Position numbers and translations under genes: made by a program | In this document: positions 9,301-64,000 of the stretch, in pieces | Numbering within the stretch: the stretch's first letter is position 1 | Layout of the letters: each line of letters begins with the position of its first letter | Assembly: GCF_964188315.1 (NCBI RefSeq) | Contig: NC_135667.1 | Span: 55,428,001 to 55,492,000, forward strand | Direction: 5' to 3' | Source of the DNA: Podarcis muralis | Lineage: Eukaryota | DNA length: 64,000 nt | The notes under the pieces: generated by a model | The model's input: only the letters and a program-made list of their open reading frames with translations | The model's database searches: none | Told to the model about the DNA's origin: nothing

Positions 9301-9884
9301 AATCAGGAAGTAAATCTGATCAGGAGAAGGGCAGAGTTGACCTTGAATTAATGTGTGACTTAAGATGACTAATGTGCAAATCACAATGAAACTTTTTATT
9401 CCGTAGTCTTGGATTTATATTCTTACACTCGTCTTGGGAAGGAGCACTGCTTAGCTTTATTTTGCCATCTGCTTTAGGAAAGCAGATTTTTTTTCCTTTC
9501 TGGATTAACAAAACCACAAGGAAATAATTAACTTTTAATTGCCATATCTCAAAAATTTTGCGTTTACTAGAGATTTGAAAGCTTGACAAATGATGCGCCT
9601 TTTTCTCTAAGGGTACCTGCCACATCAATAAGAGCATTTTGTGTGTCTCTTGGTGCAAGTGATTTATTTCTTAAAATTTGTATACCACTTGGTTGGGGAG
9701 GGAAACCTCAAAGCAGTGGTGGGACGTGGGTGGGCGATGTAACATTCTTGCAGAATTGTGCAGTGTCTGAGATCTACTTCCTATCCCACAGTGTGCCTCT
9801 TTGTGTCGCTGTCGTTTCTTTCTTTCTCGGCCTAGAAAGCACACTGGCTATTTTTAACAGGTGATTCTGGGTTCTGTCTTGCAG

Positions 9885-10097
9885 ATGACCTGCTATGACA
9901 AGAAGCTGAGGCAGACAAGTCCTGAGCAGCTGAATGACCACATGGTGGTTCCACTGCACTCCAGAGTGAACGGCTGGTCTTTACCACTCCACTCGTTCCA
10001 GTTGATCACCCTGGTGCTTTATTCATACTTGGCCATAGTGGGCTTTGGTATCTACATTCCTCTTCTCCCAAATGAATGGAAATTGGTCGCCTATGCT
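9885..10097 (+). CDS. ZDHHC11: ZDHHC11 coding exon 1 (MTCYDKKL...RVNGWSLPLHSFQ...KLVAYA)
   Basis: RVNGWSLPLH.FQ motif matches recalled ZDHHC11 (ZDHHC1/11 subfamily); 213 bp, phase 0; ATG directly follows tcttgcag; ends at GTATCCTTT donor. Confidence 0.9.
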
Positions 10098-10634
10098 GTA
10101 TCCTTTCCCCTTCCGTTTAAAATCCTGGGGTAAAACTAACAATGCACATGAACTGCATATGGCATGCGTGGGGAGAGGAATAACCAGTTCCTAAGCCGCA
10201 ATTCTGGATCCAGTTACTTCTGAGTAAGCTCCATTTAATGCAAGGAGACTTAGGCTGCAATTCTCAGCAAGCTTACTCCAAAGTAACTCCCTCTGGAATC
10301 AGAGGCACTTACTTCCAGGTAAGTAGGGTTACAATTGCAGCCTGCATAGGATTGCACTCTCATTCTCGCATTGTATTCTGAAAACAGGTGCAAGTTGTGA
10401 GTTGTTTTGAAATGTGACTGATCTTTTTTGCAATCCAGACCACATGTTAGGGGCGAGCAGGGCTGTTCTGTTTTCACTCTCTTCTCCACCTCCACCTTTT
10501 CCACTTCCCCCTTCCTTCTCTCCTTCTGGGTTTCCCACCCTCATGAAATTAGGCCAAGCTCATGGGCCACATTTGGCCCACGCTTTTCAGGCACAGAACC
10601 AGGCAGGCATCTTTACTAAATTAGGTGGTTTATG

Positions 10635-10814
10635 CAGTGGCGTAGCGTGGGTTGTCAGCACCCGGGGCAAGGCAAGTAATTTGTGCCCCCTAACCCGTGG
10701 ATTTGCGCCCCCTAACCTGTGGATTTGCGCCCCCTAACCCATGGATTTGCCCTAACCCCAGATGTTGCGCCCGGTGCGGCCGGCCCCCCCTGCACCCCCC
10801 ACGCTACGCCACTG
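10635..10814. mobile_element. 180-bp hAT MITE with internal ~23-bp tandem repeats
   Basis: TIR CAGTGGCGTAGCGTGGG...CCCACGCTACGCCACTG; 8-bp TSD ggtttatg at 10627-10634 and 10815-10822. Confidence 0.9.
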
Positions 10815-11609
10815 GGTTTATGTCCTTAAGGGAAATGCCAAAATGTTCACCTCGCAAGCTGCTAAACATTTTCGTGGGCGACTAATGTCGGCAAACCTGC
10901 AGTGAACAGCAATGTTCAGTAGTATTATTACAGCATTATTACAACCAATGGGCCTTTTTCCCAGTTAAGTGTGTGCATAGGATTGCAGCCTTATTTGAAA
11001 CTTTTGGGGTTTTGTCTTTCAGAGGAGTAGGGTCTTGTCTGGACTGAACTTTTGGAGGAACCAAAATGTATTATCCCTCTGTTTATACTTTTAAAACTTG
11101 ATTGTGATCATTCAGTAATATATTTTAAACCAACAGTCATTTGTAGTGTGCTTTGTGTAATGTGGCTCGGCTGCTTCATTTAGCTGCTCTTTTTAAAAGG
11201 CTCAGTAAAGTTTTTCTGTACAGGATGAGGAGTCCAGGGGTCAGGAAGGACACTAACATTGTGAATAGGAAACTCATAAATCCTGGAATTGATACACTGT
11301 TTGTGTACTAAACACATGATTGTTGCTAGGAAGACTTAATGGTGCCCTCAATTATTCTTGCACATGATGATCCAGTTTAAAGTGAGAATATAATTGTCAA
11401 GTTAGAACAAGTGTTCAAGTATGGGTGCCAGATGCAGTTTTTGGCCCTTCTGCTCCATTTGAGCATCAACTAGAAAAACAACTATTTTAGTAATAAAACT
11501 TTAAATCACAAATGAAAAATGAGAACCATTTTCCTGAACTTGAAATATCCTGTTCAAACAGATTTAAACATGGCTGCCAGTTGATTTAATGGATTGATTA
11601 GTGAATTGT

Positions 11610-11740
11610 AGAACCATAAGATTGTAGCGTTGGAAGGGGCCCAAGGGTCATCTAGTCCAACCCCATGAAATGCAGGAATCTCAACTAAAGCACCCTTGAC
11701 AGATGGCCATCCAGCCTCTGCTTAGAAACCTCCAAGTTGC
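11610..11740 (-). mobile_element. CR1 LINE 3' remnant
   Basis: gttggaaggg...ggtcatctagtccaacccc...gacagatggccatccagcctctgctt resembles the CR1 3' end at 52060-52200. Confidence 0.6.
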
Positions 11741-12313
11741 TTGAAGATGAAGTTGTTGTAATGCTTTCTTATAGAGGATCTGCTTCTAGGGTTGGCATCT
11801 TGTTGATCTTGTTTGATCAGGGTTCTCCCCTGATGTTGGAATAAAGCTTGCATCATCTCTGACTGTCAGCCAAGCTAGCTGGGGCTGATGGCCATATAGA
11901 AAGGAATTGAAACATTTGGTGATAGTTGGTTGTTATTGTATGAGTGGGAGCACTTTTAGATCTGTTGGTTCAAGAAGCTGAAATGTAATGGTAGATATTT
12001 TTTTTTCATATCATGCATGGCTATTGAAGGACCTTGTCTTTCCTTTGTAAAAAATGTTCATATATGGAACTAGTAAACTTTTAAATAAAAACAACTATAG
12101 TACATAAACAGGAATTTTCCTATTCTGGGGAGAGTAAGGAGGGCATCTGAGATTGTTTGAGATTGCCTTTCCTACAAGCAATGGAGTCTCAAGATGTGTT
12201 GGCCAGGTGTGGTACCTTATCAGAATGAATTATTGTACTGCTTTGATGTCTTAAAGACATTCAGTTCTACTTGTATAGAACTGTGGTGTATGGGAATTTC
12301 CTTTTCCTGACAT

Positions 12314-12474
12314 CACTGGCGGAGGAAGGGGGGGAGTGCACCACCCCCGGCAGTGCGATCCTGGTGGGGTTCCATCACGGTTGCCCCACAGGCGGCATGC
12401 CCTGCCCGCGTGCTAGCCCCCCCCCTGTTCTCCACCCCCAGTGCCGGAGCATGAAGCTTGAAGCTCCGCCACTG
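12314..12474. mobile_element. 161-bp hAT MITE
   Basis: TIR CACTGGCGGAG / CTCCGCCACTG (1 mismatch); 8-bp TSD cctgacat at 12306-12313 and 12475-12482. Confidence 0.85.
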
Positions 12475-12883
12475 CCTGACATGTCCTGGTTTTCAGGTGT
12501 AAAAATGGTGTCGAGGGGGAATTTTGCTGAATCTGCAAAATGTTAGGTCTCCCCAAAGAAAGCTCAATGGCTTTGTGGGTGTCAGGAATTTTACTTTTTG
12601 AAATATGGCAAAAATGGTGATGGTGCAATACTGAATCTATGACAATCAGACAGAAACTAGTATTTTGCTCTTCCGGAGTCCTGCAAACAAATCCACTAAA
12701 ACTAGTAGCCTTTGTTTGTGGCATAAGAGAAAAGAATACCAGTGACAGAGCTTTCTACCTGGCCATTTGAATACTGAAGCACCTAAGCAAATCTGGTGAC
12801 TTAATGTAACAAATGTAAAAAACATTTCCAGATTCTTATATTCTCTTGTTTTTTGACTTTTCCTTAACCTCATTACAATGCAG

Positions 12884-13062
12884 GTGATTGGCTTAATTTT
12901 TGTGCATCACTTAATCACTCATCTTGTTGCAGTCACTATCGATCCAGCAGATCAAAATATACTGAAGAAGAAAAATTACAAGAAACCAATGCCAATTTTT
13001 GACCGAAGCAAATGCAAGCATGTTATTCAGAACCAGTACTGCTATCTTTGTGAAGCTGATGT
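12884..13062 (+). CDS. ZDHHC11: ZDHHC11 coding exon 2 (VIGLIFVHHL...IDPAD...FDRSKCKHVIQNQYCYLCEADV)
   Basis: 179 bp, cag|...|gtaagt, in frame with exon 1; IDPAD and HVIQNQ.C.LC motifs. Confidence 0.95.
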
Positions 13063-14140: not shown

Positions 14141-14644
14141 AGTGAAGGCAGGGAGGTGCTGCAGCTGCTTGGTTGCCATATCTAGGAAGCGAGACGCACC
14201 TTGTTTCGGATCGGGTTGCACTCCCCCTAAAATTCAAGTACCTACTCCGGGAGAACTCTGGGAATTTTCTTTGTCTTTGAAGGTTCAAGGAGCCACAGTG
14301 GTTCGGAGAGCCTACAGCTTTCCCTGCTCCTGGATAAACTTCCTGGTTAACTACTGTGATGAACTCTGTGTGAGGCTATCCTTAAAGATGGTTCAGAGGC
14401 TTGCTATTCATATCTGTATTTCTAATCCAGTGCAGTTCTTTCACATTAAAAAAAAATATCTCTGACTTCCTGCATGGCTCTTCTGGTTGTGCATGGACGG
14501 CTCATCAGTTCCATGTACATTTTGTAAATGCAATGTATAAATATTTAGACTTACCATAAACATGAGACAGCCTTTATTTATGTGGTCTATTTTAGTACCT
14601 GAATTCTATTGTATTCTATTTAATGTGTCTCTTCTTCTCCTCAG

Positions 14645-14746
14645 AGGGCCAAAAACCAAACACTGTAGTACCTGCAATAAGTGTATTGCGGACTTTGACC
14701 ATCACTGTAATTGGCTAAATAACTGTGTTGGAAGCCGAAACTACTG
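14645..14746 (+). CDS. ZDHHC11: ZDHHC11 coding exon 3, DHHC cysteine-rich domain ([34 protein letters not shown])
   Basis: 102 bp, ctcctcag|...|gtaagc; intact DHHC codons at 14697-14708. Confidence 0.97.
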
Positions 14747-15470
14747 GTAAGCTAACAGCAGCTAGCTTTGGAAATATGACTCTAAAATAAAGGCCCTAGT
14801 TAGGAAGACAGAAGTGAAGCACCCACTCCCATCTCTAGGAACACCTGTACTTTTAAACAATCTATTAGTTTTGCATCCAAAGTATCAAAACTGAAGTGGT
14901 TCTATGTACTAAATAAGCATTCCAGAGGATCTAATCCAGTTACCTAAAAAGCTAAGTGTTTGCCCTGAGTAAATAACTTTGATTGCTTCCAAATTGGCAC
15001 TTTTCAAAAGGAACAACATCCTTTGTTCGCACACTCTTTATGTAGCATCTAGACAACCTATTTGGCAGCTTCTGGCATTCCAATGTCTTCTGTGTTGTCC
15101 TCCTGTCTTCTCTGAGCCCTGGTTTGTATATAATTTTTTTTAATGAAATGCAGTTGAAGTTTAGACATGGTTCCATTAAGGCTCCTGTGCCTTTAATTAA
15201 ATACTTACTGTTTGTTGCTTCACCACATTTTATTGCTTCTTGTTGAGCATGGCTGGGAGGGGTGTGTGGAGTTAGTGAATTGCTCCTTGAATAGCCTCTC
15301 TCAATTTCTGTGCCTTTTGGTAGCTGGATTCTTCTTCTTCTGTTAAATAGCATATTAATGCTGTTTCTCAATAACAATGGAAGGCGGGGGTGGGGTGGAC
15401 AATGCAACTGGTCAGTAAATCCAGGGGAACAGAAACTGAAATTAGAGTAATTAAGAAAAATTGTTCAGGG

Positions 15471-18858: not shown

Positions 18859-18983
18859 GTTTTTCTTCAATGCGATTGCTTCTGCTGCTCTTGGAATCCT
18901 TCTGCTGATTATGGTGATGATATATGTCTTCATCCAGTATTTCGTGGACCCAGAACGGCTCCGCACATCTCCCCAGTTTGAAA
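18859..18983 (+). CDS. ZDHHC11: ZDHHC11 coding exon 4 (FFFNAIASAALGILLLIMVMIYVFIQYFVDPERLRTSPQFE)
   Basis: 125 bp, catag|...|gtattg; hydrophobic TM3; phase-compatible with exons 3 and 5. Confidence 0.92.
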
Positions 18984-19629
18984 GTATTGTTCCACTGACT
19001 TAAAAAAACTTTTTACACCAATGTGACCTAGTAGTACTTTTTCAAGGTAGTGCCTATGGTTTCTTAAACAGAAAGGGGTGGTCATTAAGAGGGAAAACCA
19101 GCTCATGATTGGTATAGTACTGACTAGACAGGCGTTTGAGCAATGTCCTTCTCTCAACCAAAATTTTTATATGCAAACATTAGGGTTCATTTGTACAACT
19201 ATTGTAATTTTGAGGGTGGCCACACAAAGTGGTATAAACATGTACTTGTTCTTTTCAAAATATAATAAAGTAAGACCCCAGTTGAGAGGACTTTCACAAG
19301 ACTAATTCACCATGTAGGAAGGAAGATATCATTGAGGTGGGAAGGTTTTCATCTGTGAATTTGTCAATTCCTATTTTAAAGCCATCTAGGTTGGTGGCTG
19401 TCACTGCCTGTTACCACCCTGTATGCAAGATTTCTTAGTGCAGGCAACACTGTCAAATGGTTCACATCAATGCAACATATTATAATGTTACTACTGTCTG
19501 AAATCTGGAAATATTTTATGAGAGATTCACCATGTACTTCCATTAGATTCCAGTTTTAATGTTATACATTTCTGAGTTTGTTAGAAATTTCCAATAACAA
19601 AGGATATAAGTTTGTAATTATGTTTTCAT

Positions 19630-20108: not shown

Positions 20109-20264
20109 GTGTCACTAGAAATGGCACCTGGCTGGTCTTTCTTCCTGTTGCTCCAGTAGAGACTACAGCAGCTGGTATCCTGAGTGTAGCAATATTAACT
20201 GTGGTTTTGGGATCTGCTTCTTTCTTGCTGCTTGGACACTTGTTGACGTTTCATCTTTACCTCT
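20109..20264 (+). CDS. ZDHHC11: ZDHHC11 coding exon 5 (VTRNGTWLVFLPVAPVE...LLGHLLTFHLYL)
   Basis: 156 bp, ccaatag|...|gtaagt; TWL.FLP and LG.LL.FH.YL motifs, TM4. Confidence 0.93.
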
Positions 20265-20512: not shown

Positions 20513-20634
20513 TGAATAAAAAGATGAACACATATGAATACATGACTCGACATCGACCCAGGCTGTCTACCATATCTCGAGAAACAAGCACAGAGGGAAC
20601 ATCGGATACAACACACACAGTGGACTCCTTACAG
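20513..20634 (+). CDS. ZDHHC11: ZDHHC11 coding exon 6 (LNKKMNTYEYMTRHRPRLSTISRETSTEGTSDTTHTVDSLQ)
   Basis: 122 bp, gtacgtag|...cag|gtaaga; KKM.TxEY motif region in frame with exon 5. Confidence 0.85.
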
Positions 20635-25464: not shown

Positions 25465-26629
25465 AACAACTGGCTGTGCAGATGGTGTTGGGGAAATATT
25501 GGCTTCTTTGACCATGGTTCTCACTTCCATGAAGAAAGACGTCTGGCAAGAGATGGGTTGCACCTCCTAGAGGTTGGCAAGAATGTGAATTAAATTAGAA
25601 TTAAATTTAGGTTTGTTTCATAATCAAATGCCCAGCCAAACACTATTTTCTCCCATCAACTTGTTCTAATCAGATAGTTGAGGGGCAGAGTCCTTTGCCC
25701 CATTGTCAAGAACAGGAAGACTTTGCAGAGGGTAACTATGCAACTCAGTCATAACTTTTGATAACAGCAGCCTAGCAACTGGGATTTATAAACAGCAGCT
25801 GGAAAACACATTTCTTTCACCATTTTGCTGAATTATTTGTTTTTAAGGCAGGGAACCTGGCACTCATTTTACATGTTTGTTTTTAAAAACATGAACGTCT
25901 TTCTCAAAAGCTGATAATACAAATATTCAAATGTGAATGGGGAACTTAATCTTGGAGGTTTGCCCTGTGCAGATGTTGAGGGAAAACACAGAGCTTTATC
26001 TTCTTGGGATGAGGAATGATCTCAACGGTAGCTGTGTTTAACAAAGAGATCTATAATGACCAGTAAACATAATCCAAACAATTGAATAACTGAACAGGGA
26101 AACTTTTCAGGGGAGGAAAAGACATAGGCTTTCAAATCTGTTAATTTCCCCCTCCCTTCTTTGGAATCTAGTGGTTTGGCCAAAGACAAAACTGAATTTT
26201 GCAATTAGGAAAAGCAATCAGGAAAAAAAACTAAATAATAATTAGTATGCAAACATTTGTATCCCCCCCATGATGTTTATGCTTGCCAGTTCCCAGACTG
26301 AAAGTTGGAAATCTGTCAGGCTGGGTTGCTGCACTGCCCACCCAGTGTTGCCTGCCTCAAGATTTGATTTTTTTAAAACCAGAAGATTATGCAGCTGAAG
26401 TCTACAGAGAACTAGAGAAGTCTGCTAGTGTTCCTGAGCAAAGTGACTATTCATAGAAAAGGAGCATAAGCCCCTTTGCTAAATAAGTGTAAGGGCTGCG
26501 CCACCACGCAGGAAGAAGCCAAGACCCTGGCAAAGGCCATGCGCTTGTGCGGCATGTAGCTATGTCTGTGTATGTGGGACAGCGCCCTATACTCAGGGCA
26601 GGTCTCAGGGCGCTTCACGACCTAAAATG

Positions 26630-27500
26630 ACACTATAAAAAGCAACCTCCTTGGGCCTCATGGCTGGAGAGACTGGAGACGCTCCGGGACGCAGCCACCT
26701 GCCGCCCGCGGGGAGCGCGCTCGGGGCCGAGCTCCCCTGCCCGCCGGGGGCCGCGGGAGGGCGCGCCGAGGGCCACGGCAGGCGCCTGGCTGGGCGGAGT
26801 CCCGCGTCCGCCCCTCGACGGCCCTTCGCCAATGCCGGGCGCGCAGGGCGGAGCCGGCCGGCCGCCTCAGAGCCGCGCTCGCCGCGCCTCGCTCAGCCGC
26901 CGCTGCTGCCGCGGACGCTTCTTCTGCCGGGGGCTCCGCGCGCCCGGGGCCGAGAGGGGGCAGCGCGGACGGGCAGGAGCCGAGCGGAGCGGAGCCCGTC
27001 CGAGCGGGGAGGTAAGCGGGGCGAGGAGCGGGGCTTGGCGGGGCTGCGCGCCTCAGGCAGCGGCGCCTTCCCAGGAGCGCCCGCCAGTTCCGGGTCCCCG
27101 GGGGCCTTTTTTGGGCAGCCGGCCCTCCGGAGCTCCGCGCCCGGCCGCTGAAGGCTGCCGAGTCCGACCGGCGGGAGGGCGGGAGAGGCGCCGGCAGCCC
27201 CAGCGCGCGCGGGTTGCGCCGGCTGCCGCCTCTGGGCGCCCGCGCCTGGGAAGGCGCTGCTGGCTGGCCGCCTCCCGGGCTGCAAAGCGAAAGCGCAGAG
27301 GCATGCCAGGCGGAGGAGGAGGGAGACGGCGCTTTCCCCTCCTGAAGTTGGCGTCTAAACATTGCCGGGCTTTGCTCTTGCCCTCTTCGAAGAGAGATCC
27401 CGGCTGCCGGCTCGCTGCTGCTGCTGCTGTATTTAAGCCCAAGCTCTCGGAGCTCGTGGAGCGGTCGAAACCAACAGGCGCCTGCATGCGAGGAGCACAC
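26630..27500 (+). promoter_or_regulatory. TPPP: TPPP CpG island / promoter
   Basis: Very high GC and CpG; GC boxes (gggcgg ~26792, ~26848); TATAAAA at 26634-26640; followed by a donor and a 14.9-kb intron to the TPPP coding exon. Confidence 0.8.
26870..27011 (+). other. TPPP: Putative non-coding exon 1 of TPPP (5' boundary approximate)
   Basis: Donor gag|gtaagc at 27012 inside the CpG island; the coding exon has only 4 nt before the ATG, so an upstream exon is required. Confidence 0.6.
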
Positions 27501-30500
27501 AGAGAGATGGCATTCTTTGAAATTGCAGGAGCCTTCTTGCATTTAAAGGGACGGATCCCTTTGGACCTCCTGCTCGGAGATGTGCACCCTTCTGCTCTAA
27601 TAGATCTTGCTTTAAAAAGCGGACTCCCTTTCTGCCCCTCAAGCCCAGAGAAATCTGAAAGATTTTGCTGGCAAATAAACAGCATCTTCCTGCAAACAGA
27701 AGCTGCACACCTACACGAGGGGGGGGGGTGGACGGTGGCGCCTGGGGGTGTGTGTGGATGTGATGGGGGAATATTTAGGTTTTTCCTAGTTATGGCTTCT
27801 AGATTTTTCTGGTGTTTTTCTAGGTGCTTCAGTGTTACGTAATAGATCTTGAAAACTGGAGTCTGTGTCAGACTCGCTGAGGACCCCCTTCTCTTTCCCC
27901 TTCCATTGCAGTGTTTATCTTTCATTTTCTGGGGAAGAAGGTTCCTGAGAAGCAATAGCTGGGTGGCGGCAGCAGCAGCAATTGAGGATCCTTATGCATC
28001 TGTTTCACAAGGGAGAATAAATTATGCACCTTCCCTGGAGGTAGCAGGTGCAATGGAAATGATTCCCACTGGATCCTTCGGTTCCACTTTCCGATTTCAT
28101 TCCCGCCAGAGGGAGAACAATATTTACTCATTTCCTCAGCATGTTGCTGTCTGTGCACAACACCTGATCTGGGCTGCAATCCTCAGACCTGGCCATTTCA
28201 GAGCAAGCCCCTTGCGCCCGTCAGGAAGATTGCAGAGAGAGGGAGCTGGAGGGCTGGGACAAACCCCCAAAGCACAGGGGCTCAGGTGGTCTTGTGTCCT
28301 CTGCAGGCGGGGGGGGGGGCAAGATCTGTTAGCACACAGTCTCCTCAGGGATGGCCCAGGCCCCTTCCCTGAATTTTCCACTTTCATTCTTTTACAGCCT
28401 TTTGATTTACACAAGTCAATAGATGGGAAAGGCAGGCAGGCAGGATTCTACCTTGTTATACGGTAACACTTCTGCCTTCTGCCTTCTAGTATGCTGACCA
28501 GTGAGGACAAAAGCACTGAGGTGACTGGAACTATATCTTAGTAAATAACTGTAAAGGGTAAATATATCTTGTGTTTTGATGTGTCATGCCCTATCTGGGT
28601 GTTCAGAACCACATCACAGGAAGTGTGTGAGGGGGGGGGCTGCGCATGTCTGCACTGTGTCCCAGCAACCGCCTCCCCCCAAAGTGCTGTCTGTGTCTTC
28701 AGTGAGCAGCCATGTTGGGTCTGACCCTCTGACTTAGAGGATCTTTTTACAAGTAAAATAAATGATGGCTTGTTGCGGTTATCTGGGTGCTAAGGAGAGG
28801 CACTCTGCACAAGCTCAGAATCTTTTTTTATTATTTCAGGACAGTTGCAGCACTGGAAAACCTCTGGAGATTAGATTATTTTTATTCTGCCTGTTACAGT
28901 TTTGGCCTGGTTCTTGCTAAGGTGGCGAAACCTGTGCCTGAAGGGTACCATTTTATAGTGTAGGTGGAGGCTCGTTTAAGGAATGCATTACCTGCACATA
29001 GAAAACTGGTATATCAAGGAGAAGACTAGCCTAGAGCCCTTCTCTCGTTGGCATGTTGGTTTTCTGTGTGCTATTAACCACCTGCTTGGTTTGGTCATAG
29101 GGAAAGAAGAGCAGTTTCTCAGAACCTTGTAAAATTGAAAACTTTGCAATCGATGAATCTATTACTAGGGAGATCTAAGTAACCAAAATTACATTCTTAT
29201 GCCATTTCCATATGATCTTAATACAGATTAGTTTTTGTCTACATGGACAAAGTGGTTCCTCCACTCTTTCAAATGACACTCAAGTGTGGTAGTTCTGAGT
29301 TCTATTGTCTATTGTGTCCGGAGACAATAGTTATTTCAGAGAGCTGAAGAGTGATCTAAGATAGGCATCATTGCCAATGGTGTGCATGCTCATCCCACTG
29401 TAATATCTCTTCATAGGTTTGTAGCTTTGGGGGGGGGGGTAATTCAGAAACCTACAAACTCTTTTTAACCAGAGACAACACTGGGTGCTTCCATGCTATA
29501 TGTACTAACCTTTAATAATGTATCCCATGAAGCCTTCATCCAATCATTGTCTTCCTGCATTTTCCCATGGTGCTTCCACCTTTTCCCAGGCAGAAGAAGG
29601 TCCTCCTTTTCCCAGAATGGAAGAGTTTGTGCTGTCTACACAGTTCTGGATGCCTTCAGTGTTACTCCTCCATATTTTTAGAAGCGGGGTGACACATCCA
29701 GAAAGGGGGCCTATTGCTGCTCAGCACACATTCATAATAGGATTTCTGGCAGGTGCCATTTCATGACCGTATCTAACTAGGCCTAAACGCATGCCTCTCT
29801 GGTCTCTTTAAATGAATGAGAAAAACCGTAATGCCTTCACATTATGGTAGTGCACTTGTGTACGTGAGTTTATTGTGGGTTTGTTGCCACTCATGCTTGC
29901 AATTTAGTTTTTGCAGCATCTCTATGATGTCCTGCTCATCAAAATGCCACCCCACATCTCCTCCCTTTAATTCAGATTTATCATTTCTGCCGGTTGTTTT
30001 TTTAAAATGTATTAGGTATTCCTCAGATTTCAATGGGGAAGAAAATGGGGTGCCATTTTGGTGAGGGTGATACTGTGTGGACACTGCAAACAAACACGAC
30101 TCCATAGTAGTGATGAATCAACAATAAACTCACATAGCTGTATTCTTATTCTTATTTAAATTATTTATTACATGCTCTTGGGTCCATAGCTCCATCAGCG
30201 TTGGTGCTGAGTCTCAGTGCCACTATAGAGAATGCCCTCTCATGTCACCTCGTACTGTATCTCAGGGGATAGAGGTGCAAGCTTTCAATCTCCTCCTCTG
30301 GCCAGCAAAATATGACAAACAGCACATGCAAGCTTGTTAATGTGGTGGGAATCCATAATCTCCCTGAAAAACTGATCCATAGGCCCAGGAGCTGCTTACC
30401 CACAACTCTCCTCATCCCTGGCCGTTGTCCATGCTTGCTGGGCAGCAACATCTGAAGAGGCAACTTAAGTACTGGCACTTAGTGAGACCATATGAATGTT

Positions 30501-41882: not shown

Positions 41883-42193
41883 ATGGCTGACAACACAAGT
41901 AAACTCACCAAGCATGTGAACAAAACACCTCCAAGGTCTCCTGCAGATTCCGCAAAAGAGAAAGCAGCCAAAAGGTTATCCTGCGACTCAAACAGCTCCC
42001 ACGACGGGGCCAGTGGGCCAGAGCTAAGTGCTCTTGAAGAGGCTTTCAGAAAATTTGCTGTCCACGGGGATACGAGAGCCACGGGGAGAGAGATGCATGG
42101 GAAAAACTGGTCCAAGTTGTGTAAGGATTGCCACGTGATTGATAGCAAGAACGTGACTCTCACCGATGTTGACATCGTCTTCAGCAAGATCAA
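41883..42193 (+). CDS. TPPP: TPPP (tubulin polymerization-promoting protein, p25-alpha) first coding exon
   Basis: MADNTSK...AAKRLS...[59 protein letters not shown]; the long N-terminal extension indicates TPPP rather than TPPP2/3; acceptor ctctttag at 41878, donor gtaatt at 42194; 311 bp. Confidence 0.96.
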
Positions 42194-44646
42194 GTAATTT
42201 CTCCCTCTGCTTCTTCACCTTACATCTCCCCCCCCCCCCCCGCCGATATTTGTATTGCTGAGTCTGTTTGTGAATAATAATAGGTGGAATATGATGGTTA
42301 CATATACCCCAATTACATCATAAACATTGTTTTCAAGTTCTGTAAAACGGGGGGAACACCATGCTATCCTCAGATATTGTTGGACTTCAGCTCTCTGCAG
42401 CCCCAGCTAGCATGGGCAGTGATCACAGGTGAGGGAACTTATAGTCCAGCAGTATCTGGAGAGCACCAGGTGAGCTCGCCATGCTTTACAAGTTTAGATT
42501 GCACACCTGAGTTTCTTTTTCTATACTAATTAGCATTCACAGGTTACACATTCCAGGCTAAAATAGATTGAGTGATAGCCAACAGTCATACTCAAGAGTC
42601 GGCACATTGAAATTAATGGCCTTAAGAAAATTAAGTATATTTTAATTGACAAAATGTATGTACTGTTTTAATTAATAACATCATAGCATAGAAACATATT
42701 AAATTATTGATTAAAAGACCAACGAAATCAAGCATTAACACCAAGTTGGCATAATATTTATTAAAATATAAATAAAATAGTAGTTTTAAAACAAATGCAC
42801 AAAGCTGGATAGACTTGTCTTTAAAAATGCTTTTAAGAGGTGCCAAAAATAATTTAGTGCTGCTACACTAAAGCATCAGTTCCTTGCAAGTGAGGAACAA
42901 GCATTATGTGGCAGTTGTAAAAATGTCAGTTCTGCAGATAGCAGCAGTTGAGCGGGTGCATACAGGGTAAGGCAATCCTTCAAGTCAACTTAAAGGCTTT
43001 ATATACTTATAGTAATATCTTGAATTTGACTTAGAACTTTTTAGAAAAAAATTAATTTCAAGGAGACTAATTGTGACTAAACTTGTATATTGGCCATTAT
43101 TAGCTTCACTTCTGAAAATCTCCCTAATAGTATTTTTATTCTGGGACAATTACTGTGCACTGGATATTTGTGTGAGAAAAACTGTTTTGCAGATTATATG
43201 AGTGCTGGCTGGTATGTACACTTCTGAAATGTTTTGGAGTCTGGCTTTTGCTGAATATTGTTACCTTTCTTAAAAACAAAAGGAGAGATAGCGAGTGCCT
43301 GGCTACCTGATGCCCTGCAGAAGGAAGGGCAAGGGGAGCCCAACCACCGCCCATCCCTTCTTCTGAATGTGTTACTTGAACACAAGGCCTGGTTACAGTC
43401 TGAAGGTGCTTGATGGAGCAACCTAGCTGAAGCTAAGCTGAAGCTAAGCAGGCCTGACTTTGGACAGGGCCTCGACGGGAGTAGGTTGGGAGACTGTAGC
43501 TTAGCAGCAGAGCGGTTGCTGAGCAGGCAGCTGGTATTGGGTTCAGTCCCTGGCATCTTCCCAGGTTGAAGGTGAAAGAACCTCTGAAGAGGCTGCTGCT
43601 GCCAGCCAGAGAAGATGGACCAGTGGCAGGGCTCCCCCCCCCCCCCAGCTGGAACTCAGTTCTGGCACCTCTCAAGTAGGCGCCATTGCCGTTCTAAGAG
43701 AAAGAAGGGAGGTACTCGTGACAAGTTCCAGCACTGACCAGTGTTCTGACCAGCTTCCTATAAAGGAGAATGAGATAACAAAATGGACTGTGCTGCCCCT
43801 GGCTCTGTGCTAAGAATGAGTTGCCTGGATCCCATTTTGCCATTATAATAAGAAATTGGGGGTCAGTAGGTTCTTCGGGTTATGGTTAGGAAAGAGTTCC
43901 TTGCGTTGAAACTTGGCAGTGTAAGAGAGGTGGGTTGAGAATGGTCCTTGCCAAACTTGGGTAGGAAATGACTTATTCTGAATGAGCTGAATGTTTGATG
44001 AGTGATTCTGGCATTTTGACGGGTGATGTCCATTTCTGCCCATAGAGTTTGCTGAGGTGGACTAGGGAGAAAATGTCTGTGTTTTTACTGGGTCTTTTGG
44101 GGAAATGTTTCGTAAGGTCAAAAGGGAAAATTTGGTATGTGCTGTTACCTAGTAGCAGTATAACATATTTGTAGTTTTTATTTAAAAGGTACTTTCCCGC
44201 CAAATGTTACTCTATGCAGGCAGTAAGAAAATTCTCACACATGCTCAGTATGAACCAGTGTGGTCTTGCAACAGCATATACTTCTGAAAATGGAAAGCTG
44301 AGTCATATTCCCTCTCAGAGCTAATGCCTGTATTTCACTCGAGGAAAGCTGAATTAGGGAACTCCTTGCTGCAAGGAAAACACTGTTTCACGTCTCAAAC
44401 ATTGTCATGGAAGTTGTTCCAGGCTCTCTATACCCTTACGTTTTTCCCCCTTGGCCTGTTAAAGATGATAATATGATGGAGATCAGGATTGCAATGAGAG
44501 GTTTATTAAGATAAACGCTTGCTGCTTATATAAATTATATGCAGTTGTTTGGAATCCTTTATATATCTATTGGCTTACCTAATTACTTAAAAGGCAGGTG
44601 TTTTTACTAACTGCTAGTGACACAAACCAACACCCCGCAGTATTAT

Positions 44647-44788
44647 GGTGGCTCAGTTGGTTAGAGTGTGGTGCAGATAATGCCAAGGTTGCAGGTTCGA
44701 TCCCTGTATGCGACATCTGCGTATTCCTGCATTGCAGGGGGTTGGACTAGATGATCCTCAGGGTCCCTTCCAATTCTATGATTCTATG
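44647..44788 (+). mobile_element. Short tRNA-derived SINE with CR1-type 3' tail
   Basis: A box (tggctcagttgg) and B box (ggttcgatcc), then gggttggactagatgatcctcagggtcccttccaattctatgattctatg, a CR1 terminus. Confidence 0.75.
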
Positions 44789-52059: not shown

Positions 52060-52548
52060 ATCATAGAATCATAGAATAGAATCATAGAGTTGGAAGAGAC
52101 CACAGGGGCCATCGAGTCCAACCCCCTGCCAAGCAGGAAACACCATCAGAGCACTCCTGACATATGGTTGTCAAGCCTCTGCTTAAAGACCTCCAAAGAA
52201 GGAGACTCCACCACACTCCTTGGCAGCAAATTCCACTGTCGAACAGCTCTTACTGTCAGGAAGTTCTTCCTAATGTTTAGGTGGAATCTTCTTTCTTGTA
52301 GTTTGGATCCATTGCTCCGTGTCCGCTTCTCTGGAGCAGCAGAAAACAGCCTTTCTCCCTCCTCTATGTGACATCCTTTTATATATTTGAACATGGCTAT
52401 CATATCACCCCTTAACCTCCTCTTCTCCAGGCTAAACATGCCCAGCTCCCTTAGCCGTTCCTCATAAGGCATCGTTTCCAGGCCTTTGACCATTTTGGTT
52501 GCCCTCCTCTGGACACGTTCGAGTTTGTCAGTGTCCTTCTTGAACTGT
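52060..52548 (-). mobile_element. CR1 LINE, 5'-truncated 3' fragment
   Basis: Minus [46 protein letters not shown]...[22 protein letters not shown]; (TTCTATGA)n tail at 52060-52088. Confidence 0.95.
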
Positions 52549-53208
52549 GGAAGCTCTCTTTGTTTTTGTCTCTGTTTGGACTGACTTCCCAAAGAATAAC
52601 TATGTGGGGTTGGGTGAGGTGAAGCTCAGAAGGACATGATTTTTTATTTTTTTAAAGAGCTCTTTAATTATAATCATGTTTCCTGCAAAACACCCCCCTG
52701 CAGAACAACTGTAGAAAAATCACCATAGCGACCAGTGCCGAGGTGAATTATAGCATCTGTTTACATTTTTAGGTTGCTAAACAGGAGATTAATATAGGAA
52801 GTGAAGGAAGCATGGCTGAACTTTTCCTCAGTGGGAAAATGAAGAGGCTGAATACAACAATGGCAGAAACTGAATTTAGCCAGGACACCTGAGTTAGTTT
52901 AACTTCCCTGTTTCCATCACAGCATTTGCCTGGAAACAAAAGCTTGGGGATCTGAATAACAACACCATTGCCTAACTTTTTATGGGCAAGGTGATTTTCA
53001 CACTACAATGCACTGGTAATATTTGAGGGCTTGTTCATATGGTGTTGTTTTTAAAAAAACCAACAAAAACTTGCGCAACTTTCAGTGTTGTAGTTGAATA
53101 TTGTTTTTCTCTAGAGAAACCATTTGGTTTGTAAAAAAATGTTCTTTCACATTCTCTACTTCCCTGAGGGACAGGAAGTTTCAGTGAAGCTGTTTTAGAG
53201 GCTCAAGT

Positions 53209-62740: not shown

Positions 62741-64000
62741 TATATAAATGAATAAATAATAGAGAGGTCATGGTTGATTTGACCCTCACTGGCGCAGTGA
62801 ACACACAGAGAGTGATAGGAGCAGCATTCTTGTTTTGTTAATATTTTATTTCCCATTTAGGATGTGTAATATTTTACTCCCCAGCACTGGAAACCTCTTC
62901 TGTTTAAAGGCAGCTTTTCTGGCCCTCTTAGCCATGGGGGGAGACAATTGCCTACAAAAGCTTCAGGCTGCTCATTCATCCTAACTGACTTCATTTAGCA
63001 CTGAAATTGTTCATGGTGACTTCTGGCACTGGCTCTGGGTTGTTTGGGATGAGAATTAATGTAGAGGTTTCTATACCTACAAAGCAGGTACATTTATCTA
63101 GCGCAATTGGCTTCCCTTCTTGACCCATATAGACTTTGCCATTTTCCCAGGGGCCAGGCATTTCCTATTATAACAGTTGACAGCTCAACACAGTTGAGAA
63201 AGGTGCTGCTGTTTGAGTGCAGGAGGTGAGGCCTGTCTTTTTAGACTGTTTTATTACTTTAATTTCTAGCCTGGAGGAACTAAAATAAATATTTAAACTA
63301 ATATAAAAATCAGCTGATGAAAACAGATTCTGAAAGCAATGCCTAAATTGATTCAGCATCATAAAGAAGACCAAAAAGTAATCTATCAAAAGCCCAGCGG
63401 AATAAAAAATGTAACCCACTACCTAAAAATATTCAAGGATGATATTCAGTAGGTATCCTTAGGAAGAGAGTTCCAATGGAAGGGAGGGGGCCATAGCTGA
63501 AAAGGCTCTGTTCACAGTGCTTTCCAAGCTGACATCTTGGAAGTCATAGATTTTCCTCTTCACTGGAATAGATGTATGCAGTCTATGCAACTGAAGTCAT
63601 CAAGCATCCCAAACTATTTTACCACTACAAATTGCCCTACTAGCAGCCATTACCATAAACAGGGAATGACTGAATTGGAAGGAGGCCTGGTGGTAACCTA
63701 GTCCTGCACCCTGCAAACAGATAAAGAATATTTCTTTTTAGCCAATTAAGAGAGAGAATTAACAGGGTTAACCAATATGCCAGTGTCAGCACAATGTCAT
63801 ACATGGATGTATCATAATGCAGACATACACATTATTTGGTGCAGAGGATGATATTTTATATGCTAAGCAGCATATTCCATAACCTCTAAACTTTTTTATG
63901 TGACTGTTGAATATATAGATTTTCCCCCCTTAAAATGACAATTTTCCCCCAGGGGAAAGGGGGGGGGGAATCTATCTTCCCCACAGCTTCAGAATTTCCC

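What the first reader, a model, noticed from the sequence alone, without database searches (positions are those of the whole stretch)
10098..12883. ZDHHC11 intron 1 is a minor-spliceosome (U12-type) GT-AG intron
Seen: exon 1 ends in phase 0 at GTATCCTTT, exon 2 is preceded by TTTTCCTTAAC then 15 nt to AG, and splicing these sites gives a continuous DHHC-family ORF. Established: GTATCCTTT and TTCCTTAAC are the U11 and U12 recognition consensus sequences; such introns are rare and often rate-limiting. The other ZDHHC11 introns here look U2-type. Inference: palmitoyltransferase output may be gated by minor-spliceosome activity. Whether this is already catalogued for squamates is unknown.
Basis: partly seen in the sequence, partly recalled or inferred. 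Interest (0 to 1): 0.7.

Follow-up and report, generated by a model that had tools for sequence, protein, structure and literature searches.

The report
Conserved U12-type intron in lizard ZDHHC11
The first coding intron of this reptile ZDHHC11 palmitoyltransferase gene carries textbook minor-spliceosome (U12-type) signals, but the same intron is already catalogued in human and mouse ZDHHC11 and ZDHHC1 and is conserved across vertebrates, so this is an ordinary, predictable ortholog.

Summary
A 71-codon exon (9885-10097, phase 0) ends at GCT|GTATCCTTT. TTCCTTAAC sits at 12860-12868, with its branch A 16 nt from the intron end (AG 12882-83). Exon 2 (12884-13062) continues a ZDHHC1/11-type peptide.

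Protein models from lizard, turtle, platypus, paddlefish and catfish all place the junction exactly there. The gene is ZDHHC11: it has a DHHC exon, its best relatives are named ZDHHC11, and TPPP lies downstream.

The identical 12-mers occur in the Minor Intron Database tables with scores of 96.9/98.7 (5' splice site) and 97.5 (branch site), far above the database's thresholds. That database already lists this intron as minor in human ZDHHC11/ZDHHC11B, mouse Zdhhc11 and ZDHHC1/Zdhhc1.

I found GTATCCT plus a TCCTTRAC-like branch site 11-26 nt from the acceptor in Phrynosoma, platypus, paddlefish and catfish ZDHHC11 and in sole ZDHHC1. In addition, 55 of 151 representative relatives read V-S-F/L (GTA TCC TTN) straight through the donor. 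The next four introns, and the donor of a fifth, are U2-type.

"Intron 1" is probably intron 2 of the transcript. The idea that minor splicing gates enzyme output is generic and untested here. Verdict: real, correctly interpreted, already known in kind. Low novelty.

The parts
9872..9884 (+). Pyrimidine-rich acceptor (ttctgtcttgcag) directly before the start codon. It implies an upstream, probably non-coding, exon.
   Evidence: the same ...YAG|ATG arrangement is present in the window, Phrynosoma, platypus, paddlefish, L001 and L002; catfish has the acceptor (ttag) before CTG rather than ATG. NCBI models of paddlefish, platypus and catfish splice an upstream exon onto this point.
9885..10097 (+). 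First coding exon of ZDHHC11 (71 codons, ends in phase 0)
   Evidence: translation; 89% identity to the Phrynosoma protein, aligned to the last codon.
10098..10106 (+). U12-type 5' splice site GTATCCTTT, preceded by exonic GCT (no A-2 G-1)
   Evidence: 9/9 match to the U12 consensus, 3/6 to GTRAGT. The identical 12-mer GCTGTATCCTTT scores 96.9/98.7 in MIDB Table S2.
10098..12883 (+). Minor (U12-type) GT-AG intron, 2786 nt. If retained, the reading frame stops after 11 extra codons.
   Evidence: Only the first ~68 nt and the last ~42 nt align with the Phrynosoma intron; beyond these, only a fragment of an interspersed repeat (11612-11735) matches.
12860..12868 (+). U12 branch-point sequence TTCCTTAAC, branch A at 12867, 16 nt from the intron end
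   Evidence: The identical 12-mer TTTTCCTTAACC scores 97.5 in MIDB Table S2.
12882..12883 (+). 3' splice site AG
   Evidence: homology resumes at 12884 in every relative.
12884..13062 (+). Coding exon 2 (59 codons + 2 nt), donor GTAAGT
14645..14746 (+). Coding exon 3, the DHHC cysteine-rich core
   Evidence: Pfam PF01529, E 5.3e-15.
18859..18983 (+). Coding exon 4
20109..20264 (+). Coding exon 5
20513..20634 (+). Coding exon 6 (donor GTAAGA). The C-terminal exons beyond it were not resolved.

Best explanation
Window 10098-12883 is a genuine U12-type (minor-class) GT-AG intron at the first coding junction of a squamate ZDHHC11 gene.

Mechanism, from established knowledge of the minor spliceosome: the U11/U12 di-snRNP recognises the donor GTATCCTTT (U11 pairing) and the branch site TTCCTTAAC (U12 pairing, with a bulged A 16 nt from the AG) together. 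U4atac/U6atac.U5 then catalyse removal. U1 cannot use this donor well: 3 of 9 positions match CAG|GTAAGT, and the last two exon bases (positions -2 and -1) are C and T rather than the A and G typical of major-class introns.

The intron is orthologous to the catalogued minor introns of mammalian ZDHHC11 and ZDHHC1. It has been kept as a minor intron since before the ZDHHC1/ZDHHC11 duplication in early vertebrates.

Shown here: the motifs, their placement, the junction implied by homologous proteins, the conservation, and the listing in the catalogue. [quoted passage not shown]
For: Motifs and frame.

Junction: tblastn of seven relatives stops at 10094-10097 and resumes at 12884.

Gene identity: DHHC Pfam hit; best relatives are named ZDHHC11 in Phrynosoma, sturgeons, paddlefish, catfish, platypus, koala and panda; a TPPP p25-alpha exon lies downstream on the same strand, as at human 5p15.33 (my own knowledge).

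PWM by proxy: the identical 5'SS and BPS 12-mers score 96.9/98.7 and 97.5 in MIDB Table S2. The thresholds are 50 for the 5'SS and 65 for the BPS.

Catalogue: human ZDHHC11 and ZDHHC11B, mouse Zdhhc11 and ZDHHC1/Zdhhc1 are listed as minor introns with GTATCCTTT/GTATCCTTG donors.

Conservation: GTATCCT plus TCCTTRAC-like sites 11-26 nt from the AG in Phrynosoma, platypus, paddlefish and catfish ZDHHC11 and in sole ZDHHC1, with intron lengths from 92 to 8238 nt. 55 of 151 representative relatives read V-S-F/L through the donor.

Discriminators from PMC11347168: no A-2 G-1, CC at BPS positions +5/+6, and C at +11 are all features of true minor rather than minor-like introns.

Neighbouring introns have GTAAG-type donors and/or strong pyrimidine tracts.
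Against: No RNA evidence from this species is available, so junction use and spliceosome dependence are inferred.

The first exon base after the acceptor is G, and a pyrimidine-rich stretch with a TTGAC lies upstream of the branch site. PMC11347168 associates such features with some U2AF1 binding.

Each motif alone occurs at chance frequency in the window.

The PWM score is borrowed from identical 12-mers in published tables, not computed on this intron with intronIC.
Confidence: 0.93

Rival explanations
1. The intron has minor-type motifs but is in practice removed, wholly or partly, by the major spliceosome (a 'minor-like' or dual-use intron).
For: PMC11347168 reports that 20% of minor introns also bind U2AF1 and that a subset does not respond to minor-spliceosome inhibition. 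Here the first exon-2 base is G, and a T-rich stretch with TTGAC lies 27 nt upstream of the AG.
Against: The donor matches U1 at only 3 of 9 positions and lacks A-2 G-1. The BPS is a perfect consensus with CC at +5/+6 and C at +11, at a typical distance. Both motifs have been kept for hundreds of millions of years in two paralogs, which would be unnecessary for a U2-type intron.
Confidence: 0.04
2. The true mRNA uses a different donor, for example in-frame GT at 10086, or a donor a few codons downstream as in the tuatara and turtle gene models. GTATCCTTT would then be partly coding.
For: The UniRef models of Sphenodon (P0005) and Pelusios (P0006) carry 6-8 extra residues beginning VSF after the exon end. 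An in-frame GT exists at 10086.
Against: The extra residues differ between species after VSF and are absent from the NCBI models of Phrynosoma, platypus, paddlefish, catfish and many mammals. In this window the read-through hits a stop after 11 codons, and the downstream GTs at 10115 and 10130 are out of phase. Homology covers the codons up to 10097.
Confidence: 0.02
3. The two motifs co-occur by chance at an ordinary U2-type intron.
For: Single 9-mers are expected 0.6-0.7 times per window, and a chance GTATCCTT exists at 63453.
Against: An exact 9-mer at one fixed base has a probability of about 4e-6. A second 9-mer inside a ~20-nt window has a probability of about 8e-5. The same pair recurs at the homologous junction in five other species and in the paralog.
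Confidence: 0.01

Closest known systems
Minor intron of human ZDHHC11 / ZDHHC11B and mouse Zdhhc11 (MIDB; Olthof et al. 2019, PMC6717393 Tables S1-S2)
   Same: Same gene family member, GT-AG subtype, donor GTATCCTTT, and branch site TCCTTGAC/TCCTTAAC close to the acceptor. It lies near the 5' end of the gene, after the first conserved coding exon.
   Different: Squamate species. The exonic bases before the donor differ (GCT here, GTG in human, ATT in mouse), the branch site is TTAAC rather than TTGAC, and the length differs (2786 nt versus 1720 and 8031 nt). I did not compare human DNA, as required by the operators; the correspondence rests on the published 12-mers and on non-human orthologs.
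Minor intron of ZDHHC1 / Zdhhc1 (MIDB) and sole ZDHHC1 (L008)
   Same: Homologous junction in the paralog, with a GCT|GTATCCTTG donor in mammals and ATC|GTATCCTTA in sole. This implies that the intron predates the ZDHHC1/11 split.
   Different: Paralogous gene, with a weaker branch site (GTCTTTAAC in mammals, TCCTAAAC in sole). Substantial retention is documented for mouse Zdhhc1 only.
Other minor-intron genes of the ZDHHC family listed in MIDB (ZDHHC8, 9, 13, 14, 16, 17, 18, 19)
   Same: DHHC palmitoyltransferase genes that carry a minor intron.
   Different: Several are of the AT-AC subtype (ATATCC donors). I did not test whether their introns are positionally homologous to this one.

Membership tests
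U12-type (minor-class) GT-AG intron | 5' splice site matching /GTATCCTT(T) from +1 | tested here: met
   9/9 match at 10098-10106.
U12-type (minor-class) GT-AG intron | Branch-point sequence TCCTTAAC roughly 10-26 nt upstream of the 3' splice site | tested here: met
   8/8 (9/9 with the leading T) at 12860-12868, with the branch A 16 nt from the intron end.
U12-type (minor-class) GT-AG intron | PWM classification as minor (MIDB/SpliceRack criteria: minor 5'SS above 50 and well above the major score, BPS above 65) | tested here: met
   By proxy. The identical 12-mers in MIDB Table S2 score 96.9/98.7 (5'SS, 17 table entries) and 97.5 (BPS); the criteria are. intronIC itself was not run.
U12-type (minor-class) GT-AG intron | Absence of the major-type A-2 G-1 at the donor (separates minor from minor-like introns) | tested here: met
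   The exon ends ...GCT. The criterion comes from PMC11347168.
U12-type (minor-class) GT-AG intron | Orthologous introns classed as minor in other species | tested here: met
   MIDB lists human and mouse ZDHHC11 and ZDHHC1. The motifs are conserved in lizard, platypus, paddlefish, catfish and sole.
U12-type (minor-class) GT-AG intron | Splicing depends on U11/U12/U4atac/U6atac in vivo, and the junction is seen in RNA | not testable with these tools
   No RNA-seq or perturbation data for this species are available here.
ZDHHC11 (DHHC palmitoyltransferase, ZDHHC1/11 clade) | DHHC cysteine-rich domain | tested here: met
   Pfam PF01529, E 5.3e-15, on exon 3.
ZDHHC11 (DHHC palmitoyltransferase, ZDHHC1/11 clade) | Closest relatives are ZDHHC11 rather than ZDHHC1 | tested here: met
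   The top phmmer representatives are named ZDHHC11 (Phrynosoma 89% identity, sturgeon, paddlefish, catfish, platypus). ZDHHC1 entries score lower.
ZDHHC11 (DHHC palmitoyltransferase, ZDHHC1/11 clade) | Conserved neighbourhood with TPPP | tested here: met
   A p25-alpha (TPPP) exon lies at 41883-42197 on the same strand. The human 5p15.33 arrangement is recalled from memory and was not tested.

The most novel reading that the evidence does not exclude
The minor intron at the first conserved coding junction of the ZDHHC1/ZDHHC11 clade has been held as U12-type in both paralogs since early vertebrates because it works as a detained-intron switch. Retention, which truncates the protein after 11 extra codons here, would tune the level of these palmitoyltransferases according to minor-spliceosome activity. 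This would fit the 43-57% mis-splicing index of the mouse Zdhhc1 intron.
Probability: 0.12. Interest if true: 0.4.

Novelty: already known. Interest (0 to 1): 0.12.

Why it matters
The main value is for annotation. The junction 10097|12884 should be modelled as a U12-type GT-AG intron. Some automated reptile gene builds (tuatara and Pelusios models) evidently miss it and read V-S-F... into the intron.

Biologically, it adds a squamate data point to a minor intron already catalogued in mammals. It also shows that the intron is shared by ZDHHC11 and ZDHHC1 across bony vertebrates. It does not open a new question; the proposed gating by minor splicing applies equally to the roughly 700 known minor-intron genes.

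Tried and rejected
- Motif frequency as evidence: rejected. The 8- and 9-mers occur at chance frequency in the window, and the second GTATCCTT at 63453 is non-coding.
- Word-index protein search with exon 1: only two unnamed fragments. For that reason I used the single exhaustive phmmer job.
- Loci I could not fetch: Latimeria ZDHHC1 (not on record), koala ZDHHC11 (gene too long) and stingray ZDHHC1-like (file too large).
- Full-text searches for ZDHHC11 with 'minor intron', 'U12-type' or 'minor spliceosome', and for U12-type introns in Anolis: no papers. The listing exists only in supplementary tables.
- Supplements of PMC7507305 and PMC11347168 are not held, so squamate coverage of MIDB could not be checked.
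- Rfam scan of the window: nothing.
- C-terminal exons beyond 20634 could not be placed by tblastn or blastn.
- Rules followed: no human contig was fetched or compared, and human information comes only from published tables. One in-script frame check joined the six exons only to count stop codons (none).

Full report
**Observation**

Reading the window directly confirms every element of the finding.
- An ATG at 9885 opens a 71-codon exon that ends in phase 0 at 10097.
- The next bases are GTATCCTTTC, so the donor context is GCT|GTATCCTTT.
- TTCCTTAAC occupies 12860-12868. It is followed by 13 nt and then the AG at 12882-83, so the branch A at 12867 lies 16 nt from the intron end.
- From 12884 the frame reads VIGLIFVHHLITHLVAVTIDPADQN....
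- The intron is 2786 nt. If it were retained, the frame would stop after 11 extra codons.
- The window has no N runs. It is vertebrate-like in composition, with 44% GC and a CpG observed/expected ratio of 0.32.

**Chance**

Taken alone, the motifs are not remarkable.
- GTATCCTTT occurs once against 0.61 expected, and TTCCTTAAC twice against 0.68 expected. The 8-mers RTATCCTT and TCCTTRAC are also at chance frequency.
- A second GTATCCTT at 63453 sits in AT-rich, stop-filled sequence and is a chance hit.
- What is far beyond chance is the placement. One 9-mer starts at the exact base where protein homology ends (about 4e-6 for a fixed position). The other lies in the ~20-nt window upstream of the AG where homology resumes (about 8e-5). 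The same pair recurs in other species (see Conservation).

**Gene identity and junction**

- Pfam finds the DHHC domain in the exon at 14645-14746 (E 5.3e-15) and p25-alpha (TPPP) in an exon at 41883-42197 on the same strand.
- The word-index search with exon 1 gave only two unnamed fragments, so the protein's identity was still open. I therefore used the one exhaustive phmmer job with exon 1.
- The best representative is a Phrynosoma platyrhinos palmitoyltransferase (89% identity). Next come proteins named ZDHHC11 from turtle, sturgeons, paddlefish, catfish, platypus, koala and panda. ZDHHC1 entries (coelacanth, caecilian, sole, rhinoceros, warthog) score lower.
- The ZDHHC11-then-TPPP order on one strand matches human 5p15.33 as I recall it. 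That is my own knowledge and was not tested.
- tblastn of these proteins against the window places coding exons at 9885-10097, 12884-13062, 14645-14746, 18859-18983, 20109-20264 and 20513-20634. Every relative breaks exactly at 10097|12884.
- Exons were searched one by one by reference. An in-script check of the six exons counted stop codons only and found none.

**Class of the intron**

- The donor matches the U12 consensus at 9 of 9 positions. It matches the intronic U1-type GTRAGT at only 3 of 6, and the exonic -3 to -1 bases are GCT rather than CAG.
- The branch site is a perfect TTCCTTAAC.
- The Minor Intron Database paper (Olthof et al. 2019, PMC6717393) scores 12-nt windows with SpliceRack matrices. 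It calls an intron minor if the GT-AG minor 5'SS score exceeds 50 and beats the other matrices, with a BPS score above 65.
- In its Table S2, the identical 5'SS 12-mer GCTGTATCCTTT (17 table entries, for example TXNRD2 and DONSON) scores 96.9 on the mouse matrix and 98.7 on the human matrix. The identical BPS 12-mer TTTTCCTTAACC (for example AP1M2 and Rasgrp1) scores 97.5. By proxy, this intron sits at the top of the minor-intron score range.
- The later taxonomy paper (PMC11347168) separates true minor from 'minor-like' introns by A-2 G-1 at the donor and by loss of CC at BPS +5/+6. Here the donor is preceded by C-2 T-1, and the BPS has CC at +5/+6 and C at +11. These are all minor-type features.
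- The one major-like trait is a G as the first base of exon 2.

**Other introns**

- Introns 2, 3 and 5, and the donor after exon 6, have GTAAG-type donors.
- Intron 4 has GTATTG (6/9 to the U12 consensus, but lacking the CC). It has an 80% pyrimidine tail and no branch-site match.
- None of these introns has more than 6/9 to the U12 BPS.
The C-terminal exons were not resolved.

**Already catalogued**

MIDB Tables S1 and S2 list the following minor introns:

| Gene | Coordinates / length | Donor context | Branch site |
|---|---|---|---|
| Human ZDHHC11 | chr5:848661-850380 | GTG\|GTATCCTTT | TCTTCCTTGACA |
| Human ZDHHC11B | not noted | same donor as ZDHHC11 | same BPS as ZDHHC11 |
| Mouse Zdhhc11 | 8031 nt | ATT\|GTATCCTTT | TGTTCCTTGACA |
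| ZDHHC1 / Zdhhc1 | not noted | GCT\|GTATCCTTG | GAGTCTTTAACC |

- No paper discusses this in its main text. The listing exists only in supplementary tables.
- I could not check a squamate entry. The species tables of the 263-species MIDB release are not held, and IAOD covers 24 species with no reptile mentioned.

**Conservation**

The table shows the homologous junction in non-human loci.

| Species and gene | Locus | Donor context | Best branch site | Branch A to intron end | Intron length |
|---|---|---|---|---|---|
| Phrynosoma ZDHHC11 | L004 | ATT\|GTATCCTTT | TCCTTAAC (a TCATTAAC lies 15 nt from the end) | 26 nt | 2030 nt |
| Platypus ZDHHC11 | L005 | GCC\|GTATCCTTC | TCCTTGAC | 11 nt | 8238 nt |
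| Paddlefish ZDHHC11 | L006 | TGT\|GTATCCTTG | TCCTTGAC | 14 nt | 831 nt |
| Catfish ZDHHC11 | L007 | GGG\|GTATCCTG | CCCTTGAC | 15 nt | 114 nt |
| Sole ZDHHC1 | L008 | ATC\|GTATCCTTA | TCCTAAAC | 11 nt | 92 nt |

- A Logan contig (L001) has ACT|GTATCCTTT.
- A JGI metagenome contig (L002) has TCT|GTAACCTTT, the only variant seen.
- In phase 0 the donor translates as V-S-F/L. Of the 151 phmmer representatives, 55 continue with V-S-[F/L] immediately after the conserved exon end. These are mostly short ORFs called on unspliced contigs, and they come from both the ZDHHC11-like and the ZDHHC1-like sequence types.
- Between this window and Phrynosoma, only about 68 nt at the 5' end and 42 nt at the 3' end of the intron align; the only other match is a fragment of an interspersed repeat.
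- The intron has therefore been kept as minor-type in both paralogs, at least across bony vertebrates, while its length varied 90-fold.

**Numbering**

A pyrimidine tract and CAG directly precede the ATG in the window (ttctgtcttgcag|ATG). The same acceptor-then-ATG arrangement is present in Phrynosoma, platypus, paddlefish, L001 and L002, and catfish has the acceptor before CTG. NCBI models of paddlefish, platypus and catfish splice an upstream exon onto it. The U12 intron is thus the first intron within the conserved coding sequence, and probably intron 2 of the transcript.

**Mechanism and the gating idea**

By established knowledge of the minor spliceosome, U11 pairs with the donor and U12 with the branch site as a di-snRNP. 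U4atac/U6atac.U5 then complete catalysis. That minor introns can be slowly spliced or retained is a published general proposal.

For this clade I found three relevant data points, all:
- The mouse Zdhhc1 minor intron has a mis-splicing index of 0.43-0.57 in three tissues (Table S5).
- There is no retention entry for Zdhhc11.
- Alternative splicing around the human ZDHHC11B intron is reported (Table S7).

Nothing here tests gating in a squamate.

**Verdict**

The finding is real and correctly interpreted. It is the expected ortholog of an intron already catalogued in mammals, so novelty is low. The practical value is for annotation: the tuatara and Pelusios models read 6-8 codons into the intron, and the Phrynosoma model skips the DHHC exon although the exon is present in its genome.

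Two first-stage notes on other pieces of this genome mention putative U12 introns in SRSF12 and FAM227A. They are unchecked and only suggest that minor introns are generally retained in this genome.

Noticed in passing
P0005 (Sphenodon) and P0006 (Pelusios) proteins; window 10098-10130 for comparison: Database gene models of tuatara and a turtle contain 6-8 extra residues starting V-S-F between the exon-1 end and the exon-2 start. This is the in-frame read-through of the U12 donor, so the automated builds missed the minor splice site.
   Followed up: partly
L004:7927-8089 versus window 14609-14775: The Phrynosoma platyrhinos protein model (P0003) lacks the 34-residue DHHC exon, although its genome carries a well-conserved copy (87% nt identity). 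This is probably an annotation error or a skipped-exon isoform.
   Followed up: partly
L002:550-570 and L003 (JGI metagenome contigs): An unidentified vertebrate contig in two JGI metagenomes has TCT|GTAACCTTT at the homologous junction (T to A at +4). It is the only departure from GTATCC among the loci read and could be a weakened or converting minor donor.
   Followed up: no
window 9855-9884: A conserved polypyrimidine tract plus CAG lies immediately before the ZDHHC11 start codon and is shared by seven loci. It implies an upstream exon that was not located in the window.
   Followed up: partly
window 26500-28000 and 41883-42197 (+): A strong CpG island (GC 0.72-0.73, CpG o/e 0.9) is followed 14 kb later by a TPPP (p25-alpha) coding exon. 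This is probably the TPPP promoter and first coding exon, immediately downstream of ZDHHC11.
   Followed up: partly
window 52076-52592 (-), 11612-11735, 44723-44788: An interspersed repeat with a CR1/LINE-like ORF tail (…[20 protein letters not shown]…). One fragment lies inside the U12 intron, and a copy lies in the Phrynosoma intron as well.
   Followed up: no
window 18984-18992: The intron 4 donor is GTATTGTTC, a weak U1 site with partial (6/9) resemblance to the U12 donor. It is paired with a strong pyrimidine tract and no U12 branch site, so I judged it U2-type.
   Followed up: yes
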